DNA from: Adineta vaga
Lineage: Eukaryota > Animalia > Rotifera
Assembly: GCA_021613535.1 (NCBI GenBank)
Contig: CP075497.1
Span: 4,340,001-4,404,000, forward strand
Length of the DNA: 64,000 nt
Direction: 5' to 3'
In this document: one piece after another, positions 2,585 through 48,129 of the stretch
How positions within the stretch are numbered: position 1 is the first letter of the stretch
Layout of the letters: the number at the start of each line of letters is the position of its first letter
Notes under the pieces: model-generated
Database searches by the model: none
Told to the model about the DNA's origin: nothing
The model's input: the letters and a program-made list of their open reading frames with translations, nothing else
Position numbers and translations under genes: made by a program

Positions 2585-4239
2585 AAAAAAATACCTCTAA
2601 CTCAATTCTAAATTAATCGTTTTTCTTTAACATACTGTTGATGTCATCCTCCCTTTTTATCCAAAAAAAAATTTATTCAATTAAAGATTATCTTGTCTCT
2701 TTGGAAATCATTAACGAAAGAAAAGAGTTCGACATACTGTTTTATAACCTTTATAAGAAGAATATATAAAGATCTCGAAAAATTTGTTTCAGATTTGGAA
2801 ATATTTTGTAATCAAAAGAGATCTCATAATTAATATCATCGTATTATAGATTTCAATCAATTATTGGTTGACTTTTTTAGTCGGTAGAAAAAGGAAAGAG
2901 AATTCTTCTTTCATTCACACTATAAAAATAAAGAATCCATTGCAATCGACCAATATTTAGCGCCATATACTAACATAGAGGGTATATGCATACTGTTCTG
3001 GAATATGGCGAATTTTTTTTTCGAAAAATCCGTTATTAATTAATTGAAATTATTTTCCAATCATTCTACCTCTATTTTCTTTATATATTTCTTCATATTT
3101 AAATGGAAAATCAATCGGATAAACATGAAATTACCAAAGTTAGTCATTTGATTTTTCAATATATATTCTCGTATGCTCTACCAACAGTGAGTTATTTTTT
3201 GTCCAAAACTAAGAAGAAATAATTTGTTTATCATTCTTTCATTTTTTCTGGATCCTGGTGCTTATATTTCTGATCTTAAAAATTTATAAGTTTTTTCTTG
3301 GCCACACAAATGGAATTTATATTTTAATAGTAATATATGACATCGTTTATGCTGTATATTTATTTACAATGATTGTAAATAAATTTTATCAGGTGTACTT
3401 GTTGAAGATGAAAAACACAGTTTATCCTAATCAACAAAAATATCTATATAGCTGTACAGCAAGCAGATTTAATGATTCTATATCAATGTCTTTTTTTATC
3501 TTATAGGAGTTATTGATTCGATCTATGATAACGATTATAAATGCTTTTATTTTTGTCCATGTAATATATGAAAAACACGCATTTGAAATCGTAAGTGTTG
3601 ATGTAATATTATTGATTTTACTCGTATTTGTTTTAGATTTTAATGATTCCTATTTTTCTGTTATGTGTTCTTGACTAATGTTGCTATAAATTGGTCATAG
3701 TTAATATCAATAAAACTCCAGTCATTCATTTAACTACTCATCCTGCAACTGAAGGTCTTCGTGAAGAAAATCCACTGATAGAAATGCATCCAATTTGTCT
3801 TGAACATTTAGTTAGATCACACAGTACCTGAAATCAAATTATTGTGATAAATGATAAACATTTTTTTTAATATTTTTTGTCAGATACTGATGTTATACTT
3901 TTTCGAAAAACAGATCTTTAGTTTATTTGCTCATTTCTGATTTTGGATATAATTATTATTTAGTTCTACATATTATCAGTAAAGAAAAGATACAAAAAAG
4001 GACGATTTCTATTTGATCAATATATAAAAGTAATAAACAAAAGAAAACATTTCTATATTGCTAATATATAGAAAAAAACTAAAAATATACGTATCATCAT
4101 ATAGTAGAAAAGAAATAAAATAATAAATCTTTTATTAGCTAAAAAATTCGAAAGTACAAAAAATACCAAACCTAGAAAAAGTCAAGTTATTTTTTGAATT
4201 GAAAGAGAATGTTGAATTATTTTTTACTATGGTTTTTAG

Positions 4240-4579
4240 ATGAATACTGAAGAAGTTCAGGTAAATATATTATCTGCATCAAATAAAAGAATCTGTAAAT
4301 TGTATTCACCGTGGTCTATTCGAGTTCATCCATTAGTCTTTATTCCTTATTGGGTTATTCTTTTTGCATTAACAATTACCATATTTCATGGTTTAATAAA
4401 TTTCATTGTAAGTAGATGATCTTTATCAGCTAATAGTTATAATTAATATTTTAAATAATTTATAGAATACAACAAATAATCCAACACGATTATTATGTTA
4501 TATTTTTATGTTTATCATGGTATTAGTTTTACTTCCATTGATGATTATTCGTATCGTCGAATACTTAATAGATATGAAA
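4240..4579 (+). CDS. Possible small two-TM orphan protein (first two exons only; 3' end unresolved)
   Basis: ATG after an acceptor-like ttttag; two hydrophobic exons joined in frame across a gtaagt...ag intron. Confidence 0.35.
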
Positions 4580-6300
4580 GTGAGTAGATATTAAATTTGA
4601 TATACTTTTATAGTTACATAGATTTCTACCTGTCTGTTTCTTTTCCCTTTGCATAGTACAGGAAACGAAATGAGTTTTTGTCAAAGAACTCTTCATAATA
4701 GCAAATTTTTACTTTTATTATCTGTTTTTATTCGACTAAAACTAAATCGATACATGTATAAATAAGACTTTTTAAAACCAAATGTTTATTTTCACTATTC
4801 ATCTATTTCTTTATTTGAAATAGAAGATTATTAGTAGAATACAATATATCGTATCACACTAAAAGCATTGATGATAAATATTTGATTCTTTTTCCAGTTG
4901 AGTACACTATTTACGTGATTTTTTTAAAGGATTATTTGAAATTTCAAAACATTTCTTGTCTTGATCTTAATATATACAAAGAGGGAGGGACTAAAAGTGA
5001 ATATTGAATATTGGAAAATCAAAGTCTTCTGATTCTTTGTTCTGTATAGTTGATTAAGATGAATTTATATTATTTACTTATTATAATTTACTTTTTAACT
5101 AGACACTTTACCTCGATAACAACAGATCTTCGAATTTAACAGATATTGAATATGAACGATTATCTCTGATCTATATTATTAAACCTTATCTTCAAAAATT
5201 TAAGAATTTTATTTTTTTGAAATTTAAATATGTATATAAACAGAATGAAAATATTGTTTCTGGTATTAATATTGTTTAATAATGTTTTTTTTATGTATAT
5301 ATATATATATTTGTAATATTTGTTTCTTCGTCAATTAATGTAGGTTGTTCATTTTTTTTAATCAATTCAATTGGTATTTGTAATATCTTGATATTCAATA
5401 AAATACGATCTTTAAGAGAAAGATATATATTTATTGAAGAATACAGAGAGAAGAAAAACAGCAAGTAGAAAGAACAGAAAAAAGAAATATTGAATTATTT
5501 TTTACTATGTTTTTACTAATTGCTTGATAACAACGTTTCATTCAGTAATTTATTCAAACTGAAAATAAAGCTTTGTTTGGCGAGTGATTTAAGTTGTTTT
5601 AATTTTCGACATAAAAACTAATGTATGGTTTATAAAAAGATACTTGTTAATTCCTGATTCTAATGATAGCTTATTTGTATTATATGTGCACTATAGCTAA
5701 TAAAAGATAACGTTTTTTTTAATATACAGATGAAGCTACATAACCAAATATGAGTTGGGATATCATATGACTGAGCACACTCATATATAATGAATTTCAA
5801 GAAAAACTGATTTTCTAAACAATTTAAATTTGACAATAAAAATAAACATATTTTTAAAAACTATTTTCGAGGAAAAGACATGATGTAACAAATACAAATC
5901 CACCAATTGAAATCCGTATTGTTCGACGTTATACTTCACTATTTCAACTAAAGATAAAGAATAAAGAAAAATTAATTATTTCGAAATGTAAAATTATATG
6001 CACTATATCCTTTATTTTGAACAAAATTTTTCATAACTTTTAATAAATGTAGAGCTACAACAATATCTGGATGATAATCAAATATCCTCATAATGGAAAT
6101 TATATATATATAAAGTTTTGGTCTTTTTATTTGTTTGCTATATGCTCAATTTTTCAGTGGATCTCTAATTTTTTGACAGATATCACAAATTTGGTACTGA
6201 TGTTTATCTTCAGAACATGTGAAAATCTAAAAGATACTTTGAAATTTATCAAATGTTTCTTTGCGCCTTTTCGTTCATTTTGAATAAACAAAGAAAAAAA

Positions 6301-6711
6301 ATGACAACTATCCAACGAAAACTTGGCCGTCGATATCAGAGATATATCTCAGCAAAACAGATATTTGAAGATAAAGAAGATGATCCGAAGGAGATTTGGG
6401 AACGAATAATAAAAATGCCAGATATTCTATCAGCAATGGCAATTGATATTCAAACGAATGATATATTTCCATTGTATGGTTTAAATAACATAACTCGAAA
6501 TGATTTGAATATCTTTTGTCGAGAATATATTGAAATGGCAATTGATTTTTCTTTAAATCTAAATCCGATTGATGATGTCAAAGTTTTACGTTTAAGAAGT
6601 CATGAACGTGAAATTGTTATTACATACGATGATGGGACCATTTTTGTTATTGTACAATCATTATCCAAAGAAAAACATATTATGTCACCAATACTTTCAC
6701 TCGATCTCTAG
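6301..6711 (+). CDS. Roadblock/LC7 domain protein (divergent dynein light chain roadblock-like), intronless
   Basis: C-terminal LNPIDDVKVLRLRSHEREIVITYDDGTIFVIVQ resembles roadblock DP.[21 protein letters not shown].LIVIQ. Confidence 0.7.
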   Translation: MTTIQRKLGRRYQRYISAKQIFEDKEDDPKEIWERIIKMPDILSAMAIDIQTNDIFPLYGLNNITRNDLNIFCREYIEMAIDFSLNLNPIDDVKVLRLRSHEREIVITYDDGTIFVIVQSLSKEKHIMSPILSLDL

Positions 6712-7221
6712 TATAACTCTATGAATATGACATATTTTTCTGAGAGTTTCCATATATTTTGATTTTGCACTCGAAAATCAATCTTACTTATTAATGACAT
6801 ATAAGGCGGATAATACTTTCTCAAATATAGATTTAAAGACAAAAATCTATCACTGGAGTGAGTATTGGTCATAAGAATAAATAATACAGCAACGTTTTGG
6901 ACGAGATATCACTTATAATCATCCTGATAAACGATAGTACGCTATTGAATATTGATATTCTATTATCATAAATTTTTTCGTGCAAAAATGTTACGTTATG
7001 AAGGTTGACAGAATAAGTAGGGAATGTGTTTTGATTTTGATATGTTACATTTTATCTGATAGAATAGAAGTATTAAATGTCAATTTGCTGGAGGAATAAG
7101 AAGTAAGCAAATAATACAATTTTTAATTGAAAAAAAAACAAGTCAAATAAATAAGAGCCTTACCTTTTCTTTGTTGTTAGAAGAGAAACCATTTGAAAGT
7201 GAAAGTCGTTGATTATTTCCT

Positions 7222-9461
7222 ATGATGATGTATCTTTCTAGCACTATTTTTATTATCGCTTTTGTTTGTATCTCAAATTTTTGTTTTGCTACACCACTCG
7301 ATGATTATGTCAATACACCTGATCCAATGTTCAGTTGGAAACGTCTTCAAACTTATTCATTACCAACTTACACAGTTTTTATATTGAATATGACATCACA
7401 ACGATGGTTTGATGGTAGAATTAGTTTGTTTAATGGAATATTCAATTATTTCTCGTTATTATTTCATAGATTCATTATCTTCACAATCGATTTGGTGGCA
7501 TTATATGGCTATTACAGTTCCACGAAATGTTCGTCGTTATAAAACAGCATTTCTACTCATCACTGGTGGTGATAATACTGATCCGTAAGTAAATGTATTC
7601 CATTTGATTTAAACAAACGTATAAGCATTAGTTCGGAACTATTTTAGAGTACCTACAAACAATCCAATGACATCTCTGGCAATAAGAACAAGTAGTATTA
7701 CAGCAACAATTTGGCATATACCAAATCAACCATTTCGTTTTTGGGTAATTGATTTGTTTTATCGTGCGAACTATCATGATAATGAACCATTATCGATAGG
7801 CTGATCCATTGAATAAACTTCGCGAAGAAGATGCATTGATTGCTTGGACATGGAAAAGATATCTAGATACGAATGGTGTTGATCCTACTATACTTCTTCG
7901 TTTTCCCATGACTAAAGTAGAGAGAAATAATATTCAACAAATCATTTTTTTAATTCTCATCCTGTTGATCAACAATAGGCAGTCGTACGAGCAATGGATA
8001 CTATTGAACAATTCTTAAAACAAGAACGTATTACGGTACCACAAGAATTCGTTATTGGTGGCCTTTCAAAAGTCAGCTGTCTGTTCATATACATTTCATA
8101 CTTATATTGTAGATCGTCTTCTTTTTTAGCGTGGATGGACGAGTAAAAATATTATAAAAATTATATCTATGTTCTACTTTTAATTTTAGCATGGACAACG
8201 GCTGCTGTAGATAATAAAAGAGTTGTAGCTGCAGTTCCAATTGTTATGGATTTACTCAATATTCGACCTGTAAGAGAAAAAAAACTTAACTATAAGTCAA
8301 TCTTGATATTTCGTTCTTTTTTTCCATAGAATATGATGTCACATTATCGAGTAGGTGTTTATTTCATTGATAAGAATACCATTTCGTTTTCTAATAGTCA
8401 CTTGGTGGATGGACATTTGCATTTAATGATTATTATGAAATGAATATTACTCGTTATATGAATAATCCTCTACTTGATAAACTAGCTGATATGGTAGATC
8501 CATATTGTAAGATATTGATTAGCTTATTTGATTATAATTTTGATATATCTACTTTTTTCAAAGCGTATCTGGATCGATATAATAAAACAAAAATCTTTCA
8601 ATTGCAAGGTGCAGGCGATGAATTTTTTCTACCAGATGGCGAAGTAAGATTCTCTTCTTCATCTAATTTGTATCAATGAAACAATTGTTAGGATTTCTTC
8701 TGGAATGATTTACAAGCAGCTACTGGTGGATCATACTTAAGGTAAAATAAAGTTAAATTATGTGATCAATCTACTTTTCAAATTATTATTAGACGAATAC
8801 CAAATACTGGTCATAATATACAAGGATATGAAGATAGTTTAGCTAGCTTCTATATGAGTGTGGCAGATGTAAGTTAACGTACTAACGACTAAGTTTTATT
8901 GATAATTTACAAATATAGAGAGTACCATTACCATCTATGAAATGGACACGAACAGTGAATGACACACATGGTCGTATAAATGCTGTCATTGATTTTAGTT
9001 CAGGAAAACCAAAACCCACAACTGTCACTGCTTATCAAGCTCGTACTACTGATACATTGCGGTAGGATTAGGAAAAGAAAACTTTTCATAGAAATCGTTT
9101 AGATACTTTCAAAACATATAGACGTGATTTTCGTCAAGCAAAACTTGATTTAAGTAATGGAAACATTGTCGCTAATCCTGTTGTATGGGCAAATACTGCT
9201 GTTCAGTTCGAAGTTGTATCAGAAACCTTTCTTTATGAATAAATAATCGTTATTTTCTAGGGACAAAGTGGCTCAACTGCATCGTATTCATTGACAATTC
9301 CTATTCCATCCGATGGTTATTGGTTAGCGACATTTATTCAAGCTACATTCTCCGGTCGTCAAGATTCAATATTGAGTTTAACCACAGAAACTTTATTTTT
9401 ACCAAATACTTATCCAGTAAAAGAATGTGTCGATCAAGAATGCTATGGATCACTTGTTTAA
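7222..9461 (+). CDS. PqaA / AprA-like secreted alpha/beta-hydrolase family protein, many exons
   Basis: Signal peptide; TPLDDYV, LNMTSQRW, WWHY, EDALIAWTW, FPMTK, GGLSKRGWTTW, VPIVMD, VDPY and GDEFFLPD motifs. Confidence 0.85.
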
Positions 9462-10994
9462 TTCGTCATCGAACTATCAATAAAATATTTATTAGTAGAT
9501 GGTTAATGGGTTTTTTAAAAATGAAATAAATACAAAACAATATATAAAACGTTTCCAAAAGTTGAACGTGGGTAGAAGAACTTACATCTCAATCTACAAC
9601 ATTACAGGACGAGAGCATCTCTGCTAGTGCTGTGCACCCTTAAAATCAACTAGTACAAAGTTCAGTTGTTCCATTTCGCAAGATTTTTAGCCCTCTTGAG
9701 CTATTTTATAATCGTACAGGATTAGTCTTTTGAAGTATTTCTGATTGATATTTCGATAAAAGAAAATATGTCTTTGGTTTTGTTGGGTAGTAGTGTGTAG
9801 TATTACAGAACAAGTAATCGTTTTACTGAAACTTGAAAGAAATATGAATGTGAAAAATATTTTGTCGTTTGGTGCAAACAAACAATCCGACGATCAGAAA
9901 GTGTTTTTTTCTTCACTTTGACGTAAAATGCGGTTGGAATCGGCACGTTTTACCTGTCAACGCTTTTTGTGCGCTTATAAGCAAACGGGTTTTTTTCATC
10001 CAGATTAGGAGTGAGTTCTTGTTTCGTATAAGCTATTAAAAAGAAGTTATTCGTTTGTCATAAGTTATTCTATTTAAATATACTCATATATTGTTTAATG
10101 CTGTTCTAATGAAAGAAATTCCGTATTATGAGTGTCCAATACAGATGACAAAATGTTTATGACACGCCTAATCATTGAGTTTTCAATACAAAGTGCAACA
10201 TTTGATCAGTGATATTCATCTTTCAATTATTTTGGCGCTCGCTTTTCATTATATATTCTAAAATTTCTGCCATTTATATAAACGTAAGATGGCATGCTCA
10301 GCGTAGGTACAATACAAAACAGAAGATAACGTTGACTCGAGCTTTTTTTTCTCGTACGAATGAATTTAGACCGCAGTTATTGTAGCATATACCACTATAA
10401 TAGACATAAAATCTTTTGTGATATTACGAACAGATTGTAAAACTTTCAACCTATGAGAATAAATTTAATCCAGGCGAAACTATTTGAATAGATAGTTGAT
10501 AAGGATTTCTTTTATTAAATATTAACATCATTGCTTGTTACTTTTCTTATGAATGATTCTCCTTCAACATTTTTTTTATTTTAATATTGTTCTATTTATT
10601 TTTGACACACATTCATCGTTTATTTTCAAATAGTTTGAATAAAAAAGAAATTCAAAAAGCTTTTCTGTCCCTCTTAACTGTGTCGCAATAGTTTAAAATA
10701 AAATTGTTTCTTATAAATTCAAGTGTTCGAATATTCGAGAAGATGACGACATCTCAAAAACAATATTAAAAATTGTACTTCCAGCTTTATTCTATGGTAT
10801 CTTATTGAAATCTATCTGATTCAAAATTAATTAAAGCACTATATACTGTTGTTTAAATCAGTAATGTTGCTTTAGAAGAAAAGGTATCCATCAACTCCTA
10901 TTTTCTGTTAAGATCGACTGTGATAACGTAAACTGTAAGAGGGAAAACTGTTTCTAAGCGCACTTCATTAACTAGTACTGAAAAATATATTGAA

Positions 10995-44633: not shown

Positions 44634-46923
44634 TTAATTATTATTATTTAGAATGGTTTGTTGAGATGGCAATGAAATCAAAGTCGTCGTTGTTTGTTGT
44701 TGTTCACTAGGAGAATAATCAAGCCAACTATAATCCGGTTTCGTGTCAACACCATCAAGAAAATCAATTTCCATATCCTACAGAAAAATAGATTTTATCA
44801 TATCCATTGCATTTAAAGCGGATAATTTACATACTACTACGACATTCGTTGCTTCACGATGAAGAACTTCAAAAATACATTTTTGTACTTGTCCATCTGT
44901 ATTCATTTGTAAACAGAGAAGACGTTCCGCAACTAGAAATTATTTTAAATATATAGTTAAAAATAGTTTACTATGTTTCTTTTCAAATCTCTTACTTAAA
45001 GCATCAAGTGCACGTAGTTTCGATAATAATAGAAGTAATTTAGTAAAATGCATCGGATCATTCGCACGATTTTTTCCAATATGTAATCTTTCCACTTCAC
45101 AATAACGTGTTTGAAGTTCTTCTACTTTCAATCTTGTACTTTGCCCTTCAATACGATCTATATCATAGCAATAAACAGAATAGCATTTTCTATCTATGAT
45201 ATTTCTTGAAAAACTTACCATAACTGAAAAATACAATACAACAAAGTAATACAAACTCTTCAATTGTTAATTCTAATCGACTGAATATTCTACAGAATTG
45301 TAAAAATGTATGTCCATAACATCCAAAACCTTGTGTCATGAGTGTATGTTCATCAACACAAGCACCATTCGATAAATAGAGTTTATCTTCTTCGGGTTCA
45401 TATCGATAGGCTAAACGAAGTAAAGCTACTTCATGTGCACCTAATTTAAGTAAATGTGCACGTTCTTGAATCGATAATTCATTATTTCCAGGCATTTGCA
45501 TACAAAATTGTATGCATTGCATGATACCTTTTTGACTGAATTCATCTGCAGTTTGCCATCGAAGATCTGGTTTTTCCTTTAAAATGAAAAATAAATGTCA
45601 TTTATTCAACATAATAGAAAGACTGAAACAGGTTCTCAACAATTGTACAACTTACATCAATCTCTTGTGATGGTTTAAAATTGAATGTTGATTTATGTAA
45701 ATTAACACAAATTTTAATTAATTTGTCATCATCAGAATTATTGTCTATGATAGGTCGTGTTGTTGGTAATTTAGGTGCAAGAACAGGAAGATATTCTGCT
45801 GATGGTACATGATGTACTTCATCGATAGAACGTTTTATAATTGGTGCAGCTCGTTTTTTAGTAGGTCGTTCTACACGTACGTTTGCAGCCTTTGGATCTG
45901 CTTCATTTAATAGTTTTTTTGCTTGATTTGATAAGCGTAATTCTTCTTTACTCATTCCAACAGAAAAACATTTTTGAAAACGCTAAATAAAACAACCGAT
46001 AATTCAATGAAATTCAGAAAACGAATCGGTATTCATTACACAATATTGACAACGATTTCTTGTCATTTTGTTAATTTCACAATTTTGATCTTTATGACAT
46101 TGATATGTCATATTTTTCTGAACACTACGTCGAAAGAATCCCTAATAAAATAGATATTCATCCATGAATTATTAACATTCATCAGAACCAAATCACTCAC
46201 TTTACATCCTACAAAGAACGGATAGAAGAGAGATTCTAGAGAATAATTTCAAATCTTTTTTTCGTCTTACCTTCACAACTGGACACACCGTAATGATATC
46301 CTGAACTTTTATCACCACAAACTACGCATGGTTTATAAACTCTCGGTGGAGGAGGTGGTGATGCACTAACTGGTGTTGTTGCCGGTTTATTGATTGTCTG
46401 TAAATTGATTTGTTGAATATTATACATCGGTTGATTAGGTATAACTAAACAAAATTTTTCAAATCAGAAAAAAAGAATATTTCCTTCTTAAAATCAAAGA
46501 TTTTACTTGATGTATTATAAACAATATTATCAAATGTAAATGTTTGTTGTTGATTGCTATTAAATTGATTTGCATTGCCATTGAAATATTGTGTTGTTGT
46601 TGGAATAGTTCCTTCTGCTTTAATTACTTGTCCATTTGTTACATTAATCCCAGAGCTAAAATATTCATCCGTTGTCGTAGCCATCAAAACATTTCCTAAA
46701 CAATCATGTTTTGTTTCTTTATTGATATCAAGGAAACAATAACACTACCTATTTGTCGATTTTTAATCGGTGTATTACCATGATTAGGATTTAAATGTCC
46801 AAGATTTTCATTTGTTGATACACTGATTGTTTCTGCACATGCTAATGTATGATAATCATCTGTATTTTCAACGAAAAAATCGTTATAATCAAATGATTCA
46901 TGTAAAAGGCCGTTGTCATCCAT
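44634..46923 (-). CDS. RAR: Retinoic acid receptor (NR1B) orthologue
   Basis: [80 protein letters not shown]; [16 protein letters not shown]...SNG...GFG. Confidence 0.9.
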
Positions 46924-47456
46924 TTTGAATATACTTCAATGAATCATTTTAGAAATCTAAATGAGACATTTTTTTCATGATTTCTATTTTATCTAGTCAT
47001 TATTCCAGAACATACTTGATTGCAAAGAAAAAACTGAAGAACGCTCAATATGAGATGGACTATTATTGCTCAGTTGAGCTAAGCAACAAATAACATAAAC
47101 GGTGTGAACGTATATCGATACGTATGTGTATGTTCCACGCGAAAGCGAACGAACGAGAATTCTTTTTTTTTGTTTCTTTCCTTTCTTTCTTCCTTTTTTT
47201 TCCTATTATGACCATAGGACTGCATTGGTCAGTGTTTATCGTCCTCGATATGTCGTCGTCGTCGTGGCCGCCGTCAACGGCGGCGGCGGCCGTTTTCTTC
47301 CCGCTGTTCAATGATGTACAGACAATGATAAGCTGTTGGCACAATGCCATGTTTGACCAAGAACAAAAGAGAAAGAACGAAAGGAAAGAAAGAAAAAAGA
47401 ATTCAATTTCCTTTACTATGTGAACACTGGTAGTAATGACTTGAAGCTATTTTTGT

Positions 47457-47473
47457 TGAACTTTAGATGACCC
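47457..47473 (-). promoter_or_regulatory. Canonical DR5 retinoic acid response element GGGTCA-tctaa-AGTTCA
   Basis: Plus strand reads TGAACT ttaga TGACCC, an exact RGKTCA-n5-RGKTCA, about 530 bp upstream of the RAR ATG. Confidence 0.65.
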
Positions 47474-48129
47474 CTCGATGATAAGAAGAGGAAAGGATGT
47501 TTTTTATGTTCTTTTCTTTTGTCATGGATTTTGAAAATTGAATATTAGTTGATCAAAATCTTGTTAACTCAAATAACGGAAGAGAAATAAATATGTCGAT
47601 TGAATTAGTTTCGCAGATGAATGAATACATATTCGATTAATAATATGATCCTTACGTCAATACTGTAATATTGTATATTTTGAATCAATTTCAAATGATG
47701 AAATTTGACTATGAATGAACAAATCGTTTGTAGAAAGCTATAAGCATTTCAAGGATATCAATTGTTAAACCATTATCATATCTAATTTGTGCATCTATTC
47801 TTGATAATAGTTACCATATCAATATATCTATCAAATAGAACAACGTATCTAACTCTGTAACCAATCTTATCTTTATTCAATACGATATGTTTTGTCTCAC
47901 ATATCATTATTTTGAATACATATGCAATCAGAATGGTTTCTTCGAGTGAGAAATGCTGTTTTTATTTATATTACATGTAAATTCTTCGATATTTGACAAT
48001 GATACAAAGATTTGTCCAAACTGACATAAAATACATCATGAGAAATGCGAATCAAAATGTTTTTTTTTGTATGTTTAAAAGATTCTTAAAAACGAGAATA
48101 ATGTTCGAATCATTCGTAAGTACATTCAT

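What the first reader, a model, noticed from the sequence alone, without database searches (positions are those of the whole stretch)
47457..47473. Perfect DR5 RARE directly upstream of an invertebrate RAR: possible ancient autoregulatory loop
Seen: GGGTCA-tctaa-AGTTCA on the RAR coding strand, about 530 bp upstream of the ATG and just beyond the probable 5'UTR. Known: vertebrate RARbeta2 is auto-induced through a promoter DR5 (GGTTCA-ccgaa-AGTTCA), which has the same downstream half-site and spacer end. Inference: this animal's RAR/RXR regulates its own gene. A rough estimate at about 30% GC puts a chance match within 1 kb on the order of 1 in 1000.
Basis: partly seen in the sequence, partly recalled or inferred. 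Interest (0 to 1): 0.85.

Follow-up and report, generated by a model that had tools for sequence, protein, structure and literature searches.

The report
Conserved DR5 site in rotifer RAR promoter
A textbook nuclear-receptor binding site (two six-base half-sites five bases apart) sits at the far edge of the promoter of a bdelloid rotifer's retinoic-acid-receptor gene and is unchanged in every bdelloid copy examined, so it is almost certainly functional, though whether the receptor binds it itself is untested.

Summary
GGGTCA-tctaa-AGTTCA lies at 47457-47473 on the minus strand, 534 bp upstream of the ATG of an RAR (NR1B) gene and about 350 bp upstream of the mapped mRNA 5' end. DR5s are not enriched genome-wide (97 in 100.8 Mb against 107 for a reversed control). 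GGGTCA-n5-AGTTCA occurs only twice, and the second copy lies upstream of the RAR ohnolog on another chromosome.

Introns of the two ohnologs no longer align, yet a promoter block of about 320 bp does (z=15), and it begins exactly at the DR5. All 10 other bdelloid genome loci (Adineta, Rotaria, Didymodactylos) keep the DR5. So do 7 of 7 metagenome contigs found through other promoter blocks. Both half-sites and the 5-bp spacing are invariant, while the spacer sequence varies. Brachionus plicatilis has no such site.

The reading is partly supported. This is a selected, nuclear-receptor-type element older than the bdelloid genome duplication. RAR/RXR self-regulation is the leading candidate: RXR is present, the RAR DNA-binding domain is RAR-like, and annelid and mollusc RAR/RXR bind DR5. 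Binding, retinoid response and homology with the vertebrate RARbeta2 element remain untested. The scan had already noted a DR5 upstream of an RAR gene on another piece of this genome (s1-484518), probably the ohnolog.

The parts
47457..47473 (-). DR5 element GGGTCA-tctaa-AGTTCA. The 5' half-site GGGTCA is at 47468-47473 and the 3' half-site AGTTCA at 47457-47462. The flanking G (47474) and AC (47455-47456) are also conserved.
   Evidence: only match in the window. (one of two GGGTCAn5AGTTCA in the genome). (half-sites invariant in 17 distinct bdelloid sequences).
47110..47474 (-). Conserved promoter module whose distal boundary is the DR5
   Evidence: collinear matches with the ohnolog start at 47474. 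Alignment z=15 against shuffles, compared with z=1.5 upstream of the DR5 and z about 0 for six intron pairs; 10-sequence alignment with invariant blocks.
47400..47411 (-). Invariant block GGAAATTGAATT; binding factor unknown
   Evidence: longest exact shared word with the ohnolog (13 nt).
47336..47349 (-). NFI-like palindrome TGGCA-ttg-TGCCAA (TGGC-N5-GCCA) with a variable centre
   Evidence: invariant arms in 10 sequences. (TTGGCtaagaGCCGA in Didymodactylos).
47327..47332 (-). CTTATC (GATAAG on the plus strand), a GATA-like motif next to the palindrome
   Evidence: The motif name rests on general knowledge, not on a test.
47224..47228 (-). CCAAT motif (gaCCAATgcag)
   Evidence: CCAATACAG in both ohnolog lineages, shifted in the alignment.
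47208..47215 (-). Conserved ATGGTCAT block, followed by a polypurine tract at 47160-47204
   Evidence: 9 of 10 sequences identical.
47016..47109 (-). Non-coding first exon as far as the mRNA contig reaches. The true start is at or upstream of 47109; a conserved Inr-like CTCATTC (TTCGTTC in this copy) lies near 47150.
   Evidence: run X1 record 1, 2264 nt, spliced. for the conserved TCATTC. The exact start position is an inference.
46955..47015 (-). 59-nt intron in the 5' UTR. The aligner places it at 46955-47013; a GT..AG reading is 46957-47015.
   Evidence: joint 46954>47014. The ohnolog has a GTAAGT..TTTTAG intron at the same place.
44634..46923 (-). RAR (NR1B) coding region. Exons: 46748-46923, 46507-46694, 46270-46444, an 8-nt micro-exon near 46203-46210, 46040-46141, 45655-45982, 45219-45576, 44996-45157, 44834-44932, 44634-44776.
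   Evidence: Joints. Pfam zf-C4 and Hormone_recep. Best PDB matches are RARs. Named relatives outside rotifers are almost all RARs.

Best explanation
The 17-mer is a functional nuclear-receptor response element of the DR5 type. It forms the distal edge of the RAR gene's promoter in Adineta vaga. The most likely occupant is an RXR heterodimer with RXR on the upstream GGGTCA and RAR itself on the downstream AGTTCA, so that the level of RAR feeds back on its own transcription. This loop has been kept in both duplicated RAR genes and in all bdelloid lineages sampled.

Shown: the element, its promoter position, its selective constraint, and the presence of RAR and RXR genes with canonical DNA-reading residues.

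Inferred: which receptor binds, the direction of the feedback, and whether any ligand is involved.
For: 1. Rarity; single match in 64 kb (expected 0.04); 97 DR5s in 100.8 Mb, and the exact half-site pair GGGTCA/AGTTCA occurs only at C6:4387457 (this site) and at C3:11305551. The C3 site is 452 bp upstream of the ATG of the RAR ohnolog, on the gene strand. The chance of that is about 5e-4 per kb per strand.
2. Neutral decay; four-fold sites are 55% identical between the ohnologs; six intron pairs align no better than shuffles, whereas the promoter block gives z=15 and starts exactly at the DR5.
3. Cross-species conservation; one DR5 on the gene strand, 427-555 bp upstream of the ATG, in A. ricciae, A. 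steineri (two copies), Rotaria sordida (two copies), R. socialis and Rotaria Silwood1 and Silwood2. Didymodactylos carnosus also has one (AGGTCA-ctcag-AGTTCA).
4. Unbiased test; a metagenome scan anchored only on other promoter blocks returned 7 genomic contigs, and all 7 carry the DR5 56-78 bp upstream of the anchor.
5. Pattern of variation; across 17 distinct sequences, G-RGGTCA and AGTTCA-A are invariant, the spacing is always 5, and the spacer letters vary. This is the pattern expected of a dimeric receptor site.
6. The receptor; the gene has the CEGCKG P-box. The second-finger exon is 27/34 identical to human RARalpha, and its top 5 PDB hits are RARs. The LBD exon's top 20 PDB hits are RARs.
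7. The partner. RXR orthologues at C2:11180277 and C5:8213017 (E 6e-31 to RXR DNA-binding domains).
8. Literature. [quoted passage not shown] Mollusc RAR/RXR binds DR5, including the AGTTCA variant (PMC5398557). Vertebrate RARbeta is autoregulated through a promoter DR5 (PMC10218549).
Against: - There are no binding or expression data of any kind.
- This genome encodes a large nuclear-receptor set (at least 163 zf-C4 exon matches), and several receptor classes use DR5 or single AGGTCA-type sites.
- The conserved A and A/G just before the 3' half-site would also suit an NR4A-type partner (own knowledge).
- HNF4alpha acts through a DR5 in the RARbeta promoter.
- Rotifer RAR ligand-binding domains are very divergent: Brachionus keeps 3 of 25 retinoic-acid contacts (PMC6947571). 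A retinoid-driven loop is therefore doubtful.
- The site is absent from the Brachionus plicatilis RAR upstream region.
- The site is about 300-350 bp from the RNA start, unlike the TATA-proximal RARbeta2 element.
- Low-depth RNA contig cover extends over 47093-47533, so weak transcription through the site is not excluded.
Confidence: 0.5

Rival explanations
1. The site is a genuine nuclear-receptor DR5, but another receptor pair uses it (RXR with an NR4A/HR38-type partner, a COUP-TF or HNF4-type homodimer, or a rotifer-specific receptor). In that case RAR is a downstream target of a different hormonal or orphan pathway, not of itself.
For:: at least 163 zf-C4 exon matches in the genome. COUP-TF-like and HNF4-like DNA-binding domains are present; conserved A and A/G 5' of the AGTTCA half-site, like the A-rich extension read by monomer-type receptors (own knowledge). 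HNF4alpha works through a DR5 in the RARbeta promoter. The conservation data fit any receptor with an EGCKG-type P-box.
Against: In the systems studied, strict DR5 spacing is the preferred geometry of RAR/RXR. The element sits in the promoter of RAR itself in both ohnologs, which parallels the vertebrate RAR promoters. No positive evidence points to any particular alternative receptor.
Confidence: 0.35
2. The two conserved blocks GGGGTCAT and AGTTCAAC are read by one or two factors that are not nuclear receptors, or they act as a boundary or termination element between the upstream gene and RAR. The match to a DR5 would then be coincidental.
For: Conservation extends one to two bases beyond each hexamer. 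In the C3-type lineage the site lies only about 70 bp after the stop codon of the upstream BTB gene. The same promoter carries several other invariant blocks with no receptor likeness.
Against: Both hexamers fit RGKTCA exactly in 17 of 17 sequences. The only change in the hexamers is G to A at position 1, which stays within the consensus. The spacing never changes while the spacer letters do. In the window's lineage the upstream gene's RNA ends at least 460 bp away (47937-47977), so a 3'-end role does not fit there. A chance DR5 match in a conserved 20-mer is about as rare as in any sequence (roughly 1e-6 per base).
Confidence: 0.1
3. The site is a chance occurrence, or a piece of a repeat, transposon or non-coding RNA gene, with no regulatory role.
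For: DR5s are no more common in this genome than a reversed control pattern (97 against 107). Many of the 60 other sites examined lie in long open frames or short repeats.
Against: The region has no other copies in the genome apart from the ohnolog. There is no Rfam match (only a sub-threshold snoU83D at E=0.82 elsewhere). Conservation across about 17 distinct bdelloid sequences while introns are randomised excludes neutrality.
Confidence: 0.03

Closest known systems
betaRARE of the vertebrate RARbeta2 promoter (GGTTCA-ccgaa-AGTTCA; Sucov 1990 and de The 1990, as cited in PMC10218549)
   Same: A DR5 of RGKTCA half-sites, on the coding strand, in the promoter of an RAR gene. The 3' half-site AGTTCA is identical. 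It is conserved among related species. Mutating the half-sites abolishes function and mutating the spacer does not, which matches the variation pattern seen here.
   Different: The 5' half-site is GGGTCA, not GGTTCA. The site is about 300-350 bp from the RNA start rather than next to the TATA box (own knowledge for RARbeta2). Retinoid inducibility and RAR/RXR binding are unknown. It is absent in the monogonont examined, so common descent with the vertebrate element is not supported.
RAR/RXR binding to DR1, DR2 and DR5 in lophotrochozoans (Platynereis, PMC5821490; Nucella and Reishia, summarised in PMC5398557)
   Same: Protostome RAR/RXR heterodimers recognise DR5, including the AGTTCA variant, whether or not the receptor binds retinoic acid. 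The bdelloid RAR has the same P-box and an RAR-like second zinc finger.
   Different: Those studies used synthetic consensus probes. I found no report of a natural, conserved DR5 in an invertebrate RAR promoter in the searches run. Nothing has been measured for any bdelloid receptor.
Brachionus RAR (NR1B) described in PMC6947571
   Same: It is the rotifer orthologue of this gene. It groups with the bdelloid proteins in the tree and is their best non-bdelloid relative.
   Different: Brachionus is reported to keep only 3 of 25 retinoic-acid contact residues. The A. vaga protein keeps the equivalents of Lys236, Arg278 and Ser289, with Leu233 changed to Phe (ungapped offset to RARgamma numbering). 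The B. plicatilis upstream region has no DR element.
NGFI-B/Nurr1-RXR heterodimers on DR5 elements (own knowledge)
   Same: They also use DR5 sites, with an A-rich extension 5' of the downstream half-site. This resembles the conserved A and A/G before AGTTCA here.
   Different: No NR4A orthologue was identified or tested here, and the downstream hexamer is AGTTCA rather than AGGTCA.

Membership tests
DR5-type retinoic acid response element (RARE) | Two hexamers fitting RGKTCA in direct orientation | tested here: met
   All 17 distinct bdelloid versions fit the pattern.
DR5-type retinoic acid response element (RARE) | Exactly five spacer bases, tolerant of sequence change | tested here: met
   the spacing is 5 in every sequence, and spacer positions 1-3 and 5 vary.
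DR5-type retinoic acid response element (RARE) | Lies in the regulatory DNA of a gene, outside the main transcript | tested here: met
   the main spliced mRNA contig ends at 47109, 348 bp downstream of the site. Low-depth cover over 47093-47533 leaves minor upstream transcription open.
DR5-type retinoic acid response element (RARE) | Bound by an RAR/RXR heterodimer | not testable with these tools
   This needs EMSA, DAP-seq or ChIP. Only the presence of the RAR and RXR genes was shown.
DR5-type retinoic acid response element (RARE) | Confers a retinoid response on transcription | not testable with these tools
   No expression data after retinoid exposure were available.
Retinoic acid receptor, NR1B (the gene downstream) | C4 zinc-finger DNA-binding domain with P-box EGCKG, and an RAR-type second finger | tested here: met
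   the top 5 PDB hits are RARalpha, beta and gamma (E 5e-16, against 6e-11 for the next class), with 27/34 identity to human RARalpha.
Retinoic acid receptor, NR1B (the gene downstream) | Ligand-binding domain closest to RARs among nuclear receptors | tested here: met
   the top 20 PDB sequences are all RARs (annelid RAR 9e-16), with EcR next at 2e-9; with a full-length bdelloid relative as query, the named hits outside rotifers are almost all RARs.
Retinoic acid receptor, NR1B (the gene downstream) | Falls inside the RAR clade in a tree that includes other NR1 subfamilies | not tested
   The tree holds only RAR-type proteins. Placement of the Brachionus orthologue in the RAR clade is taken from PMC6947571.
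Retinoic acid receptor, NR1B (the gene downstream) | Residues that anchor the retinoic-acid carboxylate (Leu233, Lys236, Arg278, Ser289 of human RARgamma) | tested here: inconclusive
   the ungapped match to full-length RARgamma (offset 220) gives Phe, Lys, Arg, Ser, so 3 of 4 are kept. The other 21 pocket residues were not scored, and binding is unknown.
Autoregulated RAR promoter of the RARbeta2 type | RARE close to the transcription start of the RAR gene itself | tested here: inconclusive
   The site is in the RAR promoter, but about 300-350 bp from the mapped RNA 5' end. The start site is known only from an assembled contig.
Autoregulated RAR promoter of the RARbeta2 type | RAR mRNA rises (or falls) when the receptor is activated | not testable with these tools
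   No suitable data.

The most novel reading that the evidence does not exclude
RAR self-regulation through a promoter DR5 is an ancestral bilaterian circuit. On this reading the bdelloid element and the vertebrate RARbeta2, alpha2 and gamma2 elements descend from one site in the RAR promoter of the protostome-deuterostome ancestor, and the site was lost in monogononts. The bdelloid RAR, which keeps three of the four carboxylate-anchoring residues, would still be a ligand-controlled receptor running a positive feedback loop.
Probability: 0.07. Interest if true: 0.85.

Novelty: new member of a known kind. Interest (0 to 1): 0.62.

Why it matters
RAR autoregulation through a DR5 is a classic vertebrate circuit. 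Outside chordates, natural RAR target sites are almost unknown, and it is debated whether protostome RARs act as ligand-controlled switches at all.

This is a natural DR5 in an RAR's own promoter, preserved with base-perfect half-sites and fixed spacing. It has survived a whole-genome duplication and the whole sampled bdelloid radiation, while neutral DNA has been scrambled. That gives a concrete 17-bp probe and two paralogous promoters for testing several things:
- whether a rotifer RAR/RXR binds DNA like its vertebrate counterpart;
- whether the receptor regulates itself;
- whether any retinoid or other acid ligand is involved.

If RAR is the binder, the same feedback motif has either been kept since early bilaterians or been reinvented. 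Either answer bears on how nuclear-receptor networks evolve. If another receptor binds, the site identifies the upstream regulator of RAR in an animal group with no receptor genetics so far.

Tried and rejected
- **Chance.** Rejected by the ohnolog copy and the cross-species conservation.
- **Genome-wide DR5 enrichment or a DR5 regulon.** Not found: 97 sites against 107 for the reversed control. I fetched 60 of the 97 sites; the other homologous pairs among them all lie in long open frames, apart from one 35-bp repeat.
- **Repeat or transposon.** Rejected: the region has no extra copies.
- **Known RNA family.** None found.
- **A stem between the CT-rich and GA-rich tracts at 47365-47400 and 47160-47204.** The CT tract is missing in the C3-type lineage, so this is not a conserved structure.
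- **Conservation in monogononts.** Not found in B. plicatilis. B. calyciflorus and non-rotifer RAR promoters could not be fetched because the look-ups were exhausted.
- **Transcript contigs of other species** (L006, L007). They carry no promoter DNA and no DR5.
- **Exact transcription start.** Only assembled contigs were on offer.
- **Complex prediction for RAR and RXR.** Not run: no full-length RXR protein id was at hand, and DNA cannot be modelled.
- **Joined coding sequence.** Every search with the window's gene was made exon by exon, by reference. A scripted concatenation had the micro-exon out of frame, was discarded, and was never sent to a search. Full-length comparisons used database proteins (P0139-P0153, P0264, P0256).

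Full report
**1. The observation**

The pattern RGKTCA-N5-RGKTCA occurs once in the 64-kb window, at 47457-47473 on the minus strand, as GGGTCA-tctaa-AGTTCA. Dinucleotide-preserving shuffles predict 0.04 matches.

**2. The gene**

The minus strand below 46923 carries a nuclear-receptor gene.
- Pfam finds zf-C4 and Hormone_recep in its exons.
- The sequence reads CEG|CK|GFFRRS, which is a P-box EGCKG split by an 8-nt micro-exon.
- A 2264-nt spliced RNA contig from run X1 confirms nine introns inside the coding region, the micro-exon, and a further 59-nt intron in the 5' UTR. It reaches up to 47109.
- The second zinc-finger exon matches the five RAR entries of the PDB best (E 5e-16; next receptor class 6e-11) and is 27/34 identical to human RARalpha.
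- For the main LBD exon, the top 20 PDB sequences are all RARs, led by the annelid RAR 6eu9.
- A full-length bdelloid relative (P0003) finds annotated proteins of A. vaga, A. ricciae, A. steineri and four Rotaria species. Beyond rotifers, the named hits are almost all RARs.
- A rotifer RAR is already known from Brachionus (PMC6947571).

The C3 contig length (20,354,754) equals the contig of A. vaga protein I4U23_014373, so the genome is Adineta vaga. By elimination, the window's gene is probably I4U23_028624 (P0145), the other annotated A. vaga RAR.

All searches with the window's gene were made exon by exon by reference.

**3. Is the site more than chance?**

DR5s are not special genome-wide: there are 97 in 100.8 Mb, against 107 for the reversed control pattern. 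On its own, such a figure would be weak after allowing for the motif variants a reader could have accepted.

The decisive point is that the exact pair GGGTCA...AGTTCA occurs only twice in the genome. The second copy (GGGTCA-tcgag-AGTTCA, C3:11305551) lies on the gene strand, 452 bp upstream of the ATG of the RAR ohnolog on chromosome 3.

**4. Selective constraint**

The two ohnologs are old.
- Four-fold degenerate sites are 55% identical (70/128).
- Six orthologous intron pairs align no better than shuffled sequence (z from -0.7 to 1.1).
- By contrast, window 47110-47560 aligns with the C3 upstream region at z=15.
- The 460 bp upstream of the DR5 gives z=1.5.
- The collinear blastn matches begin at 47474, one base before the DR5.

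The DR5 is therefore the distal boundary of a conserved promoter module of about 320-365 bp.

**5. Other species**

I fetched genomic loci for annotated orthologues. Each of the following carries exactly one DR5 in its locus, on the gene strand, 427-555 bp upstream of the ATG:
- A. ricciae;
- A. steineri (both ohnolog types);
- Rotaria sordida (both types);
- R. socialis;
- Rotaria sp. Silwood1 and Silwood2.

Didymodactylos carnosus is sister to the other bdelloids in the protein tree. It has AGGTCA-ctcag-AGTTCA followed by the same NFI-like palindrome and TTATCAT block. There the site is 3.7 kb from the ATG exon, presumably across a long leader intron.

To avoid circularity, I scanned JGI metagenome contigs with a pattern built only from other conserved promoter blocks (GAAATTGAA...GTCAAnnATGGCAnnnnGCCAACA). 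Seven contigs matched. They are genomic DNA, because introns are present. All seven have a DR5 56-78 bp upstream of the anchor. One of them (L030) is a divergent bdelloid copy of the C3 type.

Across 17 distinct sequences:
- G-RGGTCA and AGTTCA-A-(C/G) never change, except G/A at hexamer position 1, which stays inside the consensus;
- the spacing is always five;
- the spacer reads T>A/C, A/C, T/C, A, A/G.

Invariant hexamers with a fixed but sequence-tolerant spacer are the signature of a dimeric nuclear-receptor site. The protein tree shows the C3-type copies of Adineta and Rotaria as one clade. The duplication, and with it the DR5, therefore predates the split of these genera.

**6. Limits of 'ancient'**

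The Brachionus plicatilis RAR locus has no DR1, DR2 or DR5 between 1.6 kb upstream and 0.6 kb downstream of the annotated start, even with one mismatch. None of the other bdelloid promoter blocks is present either. The element is thus old within Bdelloidea. It is not shown to be shared with monogononts, let alone with vertebrates.

**7. Promoter anatomy (minus strand, window coordinates)**

- DR5: 47457-47473.
- An A-rich stretch.
- GGAAATTGAATT: 47400-47411.
- A CT-rich tract.
- NFI-like palindrome TGGC-N5-GCCAA at 47336-47349, with a variable centre, followed by CTTATC (GATA-like) at 47327-47332.
- A GC-rich core.
- CCAAT: 47224-47228.
- ATGGTCAT: 47208-47215.
- A polypurine tract: 47160-47204.
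- An Inr-like TCATTC (TTCGTTC in this copy) near 47150.
- The mRNA contig start at 47109.

If transcription starts between 47109 and about 47150, the DR5 sits at roughly -300 to -350. Two uncertainties remain. Run X1 shows low-depth cover (1.2-1.9, against 11.2 for the mRNA contig) over 47093-47533 and none from 47534 to 47974. Contigs cannot show true RNA ends. A minor upstream start is therefore not excluded. The upstream FYVE/PH gene's RNA ends at 47937-47977, so in this lineage the DR5 is not part of that gene's 3' end.

**8. Who binds?**

This cannot be settled with these tools.

In favour of RAR/RXR:
- the DR5 geometry;
- the location in RAR's own promoter in both ohnologs;
- the canonical P-box and RAR-like second finger;
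- RXR orthologues at C2:11180277 and C5:8213017;
- published binding of annelid and mollusc RAR/RXR to DR5;
- the vertebrate precedent of RARbeta autoregulation through a DR5, where half-site mutations, but not spacer mutations, destroy function.

Against:
- the genome has a very large receptor set, including COUP-TF-like and HNF4-like domains;
- other receptors can use DR5 sites;
- the conserved A and A/G before the 3' hexamer would suit an NR4A-type partner (own knowledge).

On ligand control, Brachionus RAR is reported to keep only 3 of 25 retinoic-acid contacts. The A. vaga LBD exon aligns without gaps to full-length human RARgamma (offset 220). It keeps Lys236, Arg278 and Ser289, with Phe for Leu233. 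These are three of the four residues that PMC6947571 names as hydrogen-bonding the carboxylate. That leaves an acidic ligand possible but proves nothing.

**9. Verdict**

A selected nuclear-receptor DR5 in the RAR promoter is near certain (about 0.9). RAR/RXR self-regulation is the best single explanation (about 0.5). A different receptor is the main rival (about 0.35). Descent from the same element as the vertebrate betaRARE is unsupported.

I found no report of this element, or of any natural conserved DR5 in an invertebrate RAR promoter, in the literature searches run. Those searches cover open-access papers only.

The scan itself had already flagged a DR5 upstream of an RAR on another piece of this genome (s1-484518). 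This is probably the C3 ohnolog, which I found independently.

Noticed in passing
window ~46203-46210 (- strand): An 8-nt micro-exon (GATGTAAA) supplies the Cys-Lys of the P-box CEGCKG, between two introns of about 60 nt. RNA contigs of runs X1 and X6 carry 7 extra letters at the 46141>46270 joint. A variant contig in X5 carries 6 (possibly the ohnolog).
   Followed up: partly
window 47327-47349 (- strand); L005:1150-1180; L021:4556-4590: An NFI-like palindrome TGGC-N5-GCCAA with invariant arms and a variable centre, followed by a GATA-like CTTATC. It is conserved in all bdelloid RAR promoters, including Didymodactylos. It looks like a second dimeric-factor site in the same promoter.
   Followed up: partly
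window 47072-48063: Run X7 (labelled as a different organism) gives only short 151-243-nt contigs over the promoter and intergenic region, and almost nothing over the exons. They are identical to the window at the DR5, with 3 differences at 47521, 47549 and 47559. The library type is unknown. It could be low-coverage DNA or an open-chromatin type of library.
   Followed up: no
window 47093-47533: Low-depth RNA-run contig cover (1.2-1.9, against 11.2 for the mRNA) upstream of the main mRNA contig end, stopping before 47534. This could be a minor upstream start or DNA carry-over.
   Followed up: no
window 45220-45576 (- strand): The A. vaga RAR ligand-binding domain keeps the equivalents of RARgamma Lys236, Arg278 and Ser289 (Leu233 becomes Phe). 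The Brachionus RAR is reported to keep only 3 of 25 pocket residues. Bdelloid and monogonont RARs may differ in their ability to bind a ligand.
   Followed up: partly
L021/L022 (D. carnosus) 3001-10404; L014 (Rotaria Silwood1) 3001-9308: Public gene models look wrong here. The D. carnosus protein P0264 (792 aa) fuses the upstream BTB gene with RAR across the promoter that holds the DR5. The Silwood1 model starts about 3.1 kb upstream of the ATG exon that matches the other species.
   Followed up: partly
L008-L011, L015-L016 versus L012, L017, L020 and the window: The C3-type ohnolog lineage has a BTB gene between the FYVE/PH gene and RAR, ending about 70 bp before the DR5. The window's lineage lacks that gene. 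A PLAT-domain gene lies downstream, on the opposite strand, in both lineages.
   Followed up: no
G000:C2:3034509-3034525 (-), locus L082: Another DR5, GGTTCA-tctga-AGTTCA (close to the vertebrate betaRARE), lies about 2 kb upstream, on the same strand, of a different intronless nuclear-receptor gene (zf-C4 hits at C2:3032209-3032469). It sits inside a 105-aa open frame, so it may be coding.
   Followed up: no
G000 genome-wide; C5:12522355 and C2:5045237: The nuclear-receptor repertoire is very large (at least 163 zf-C4 exon matches). It includes an ohnolog pair with an oestrogen-receptor-like second finger (GCKAFFKRSIQG...) and tandem clusters on C2 near 9.39-9.41 Mb and C4 near 8.10 Mb.
   Followed up: no
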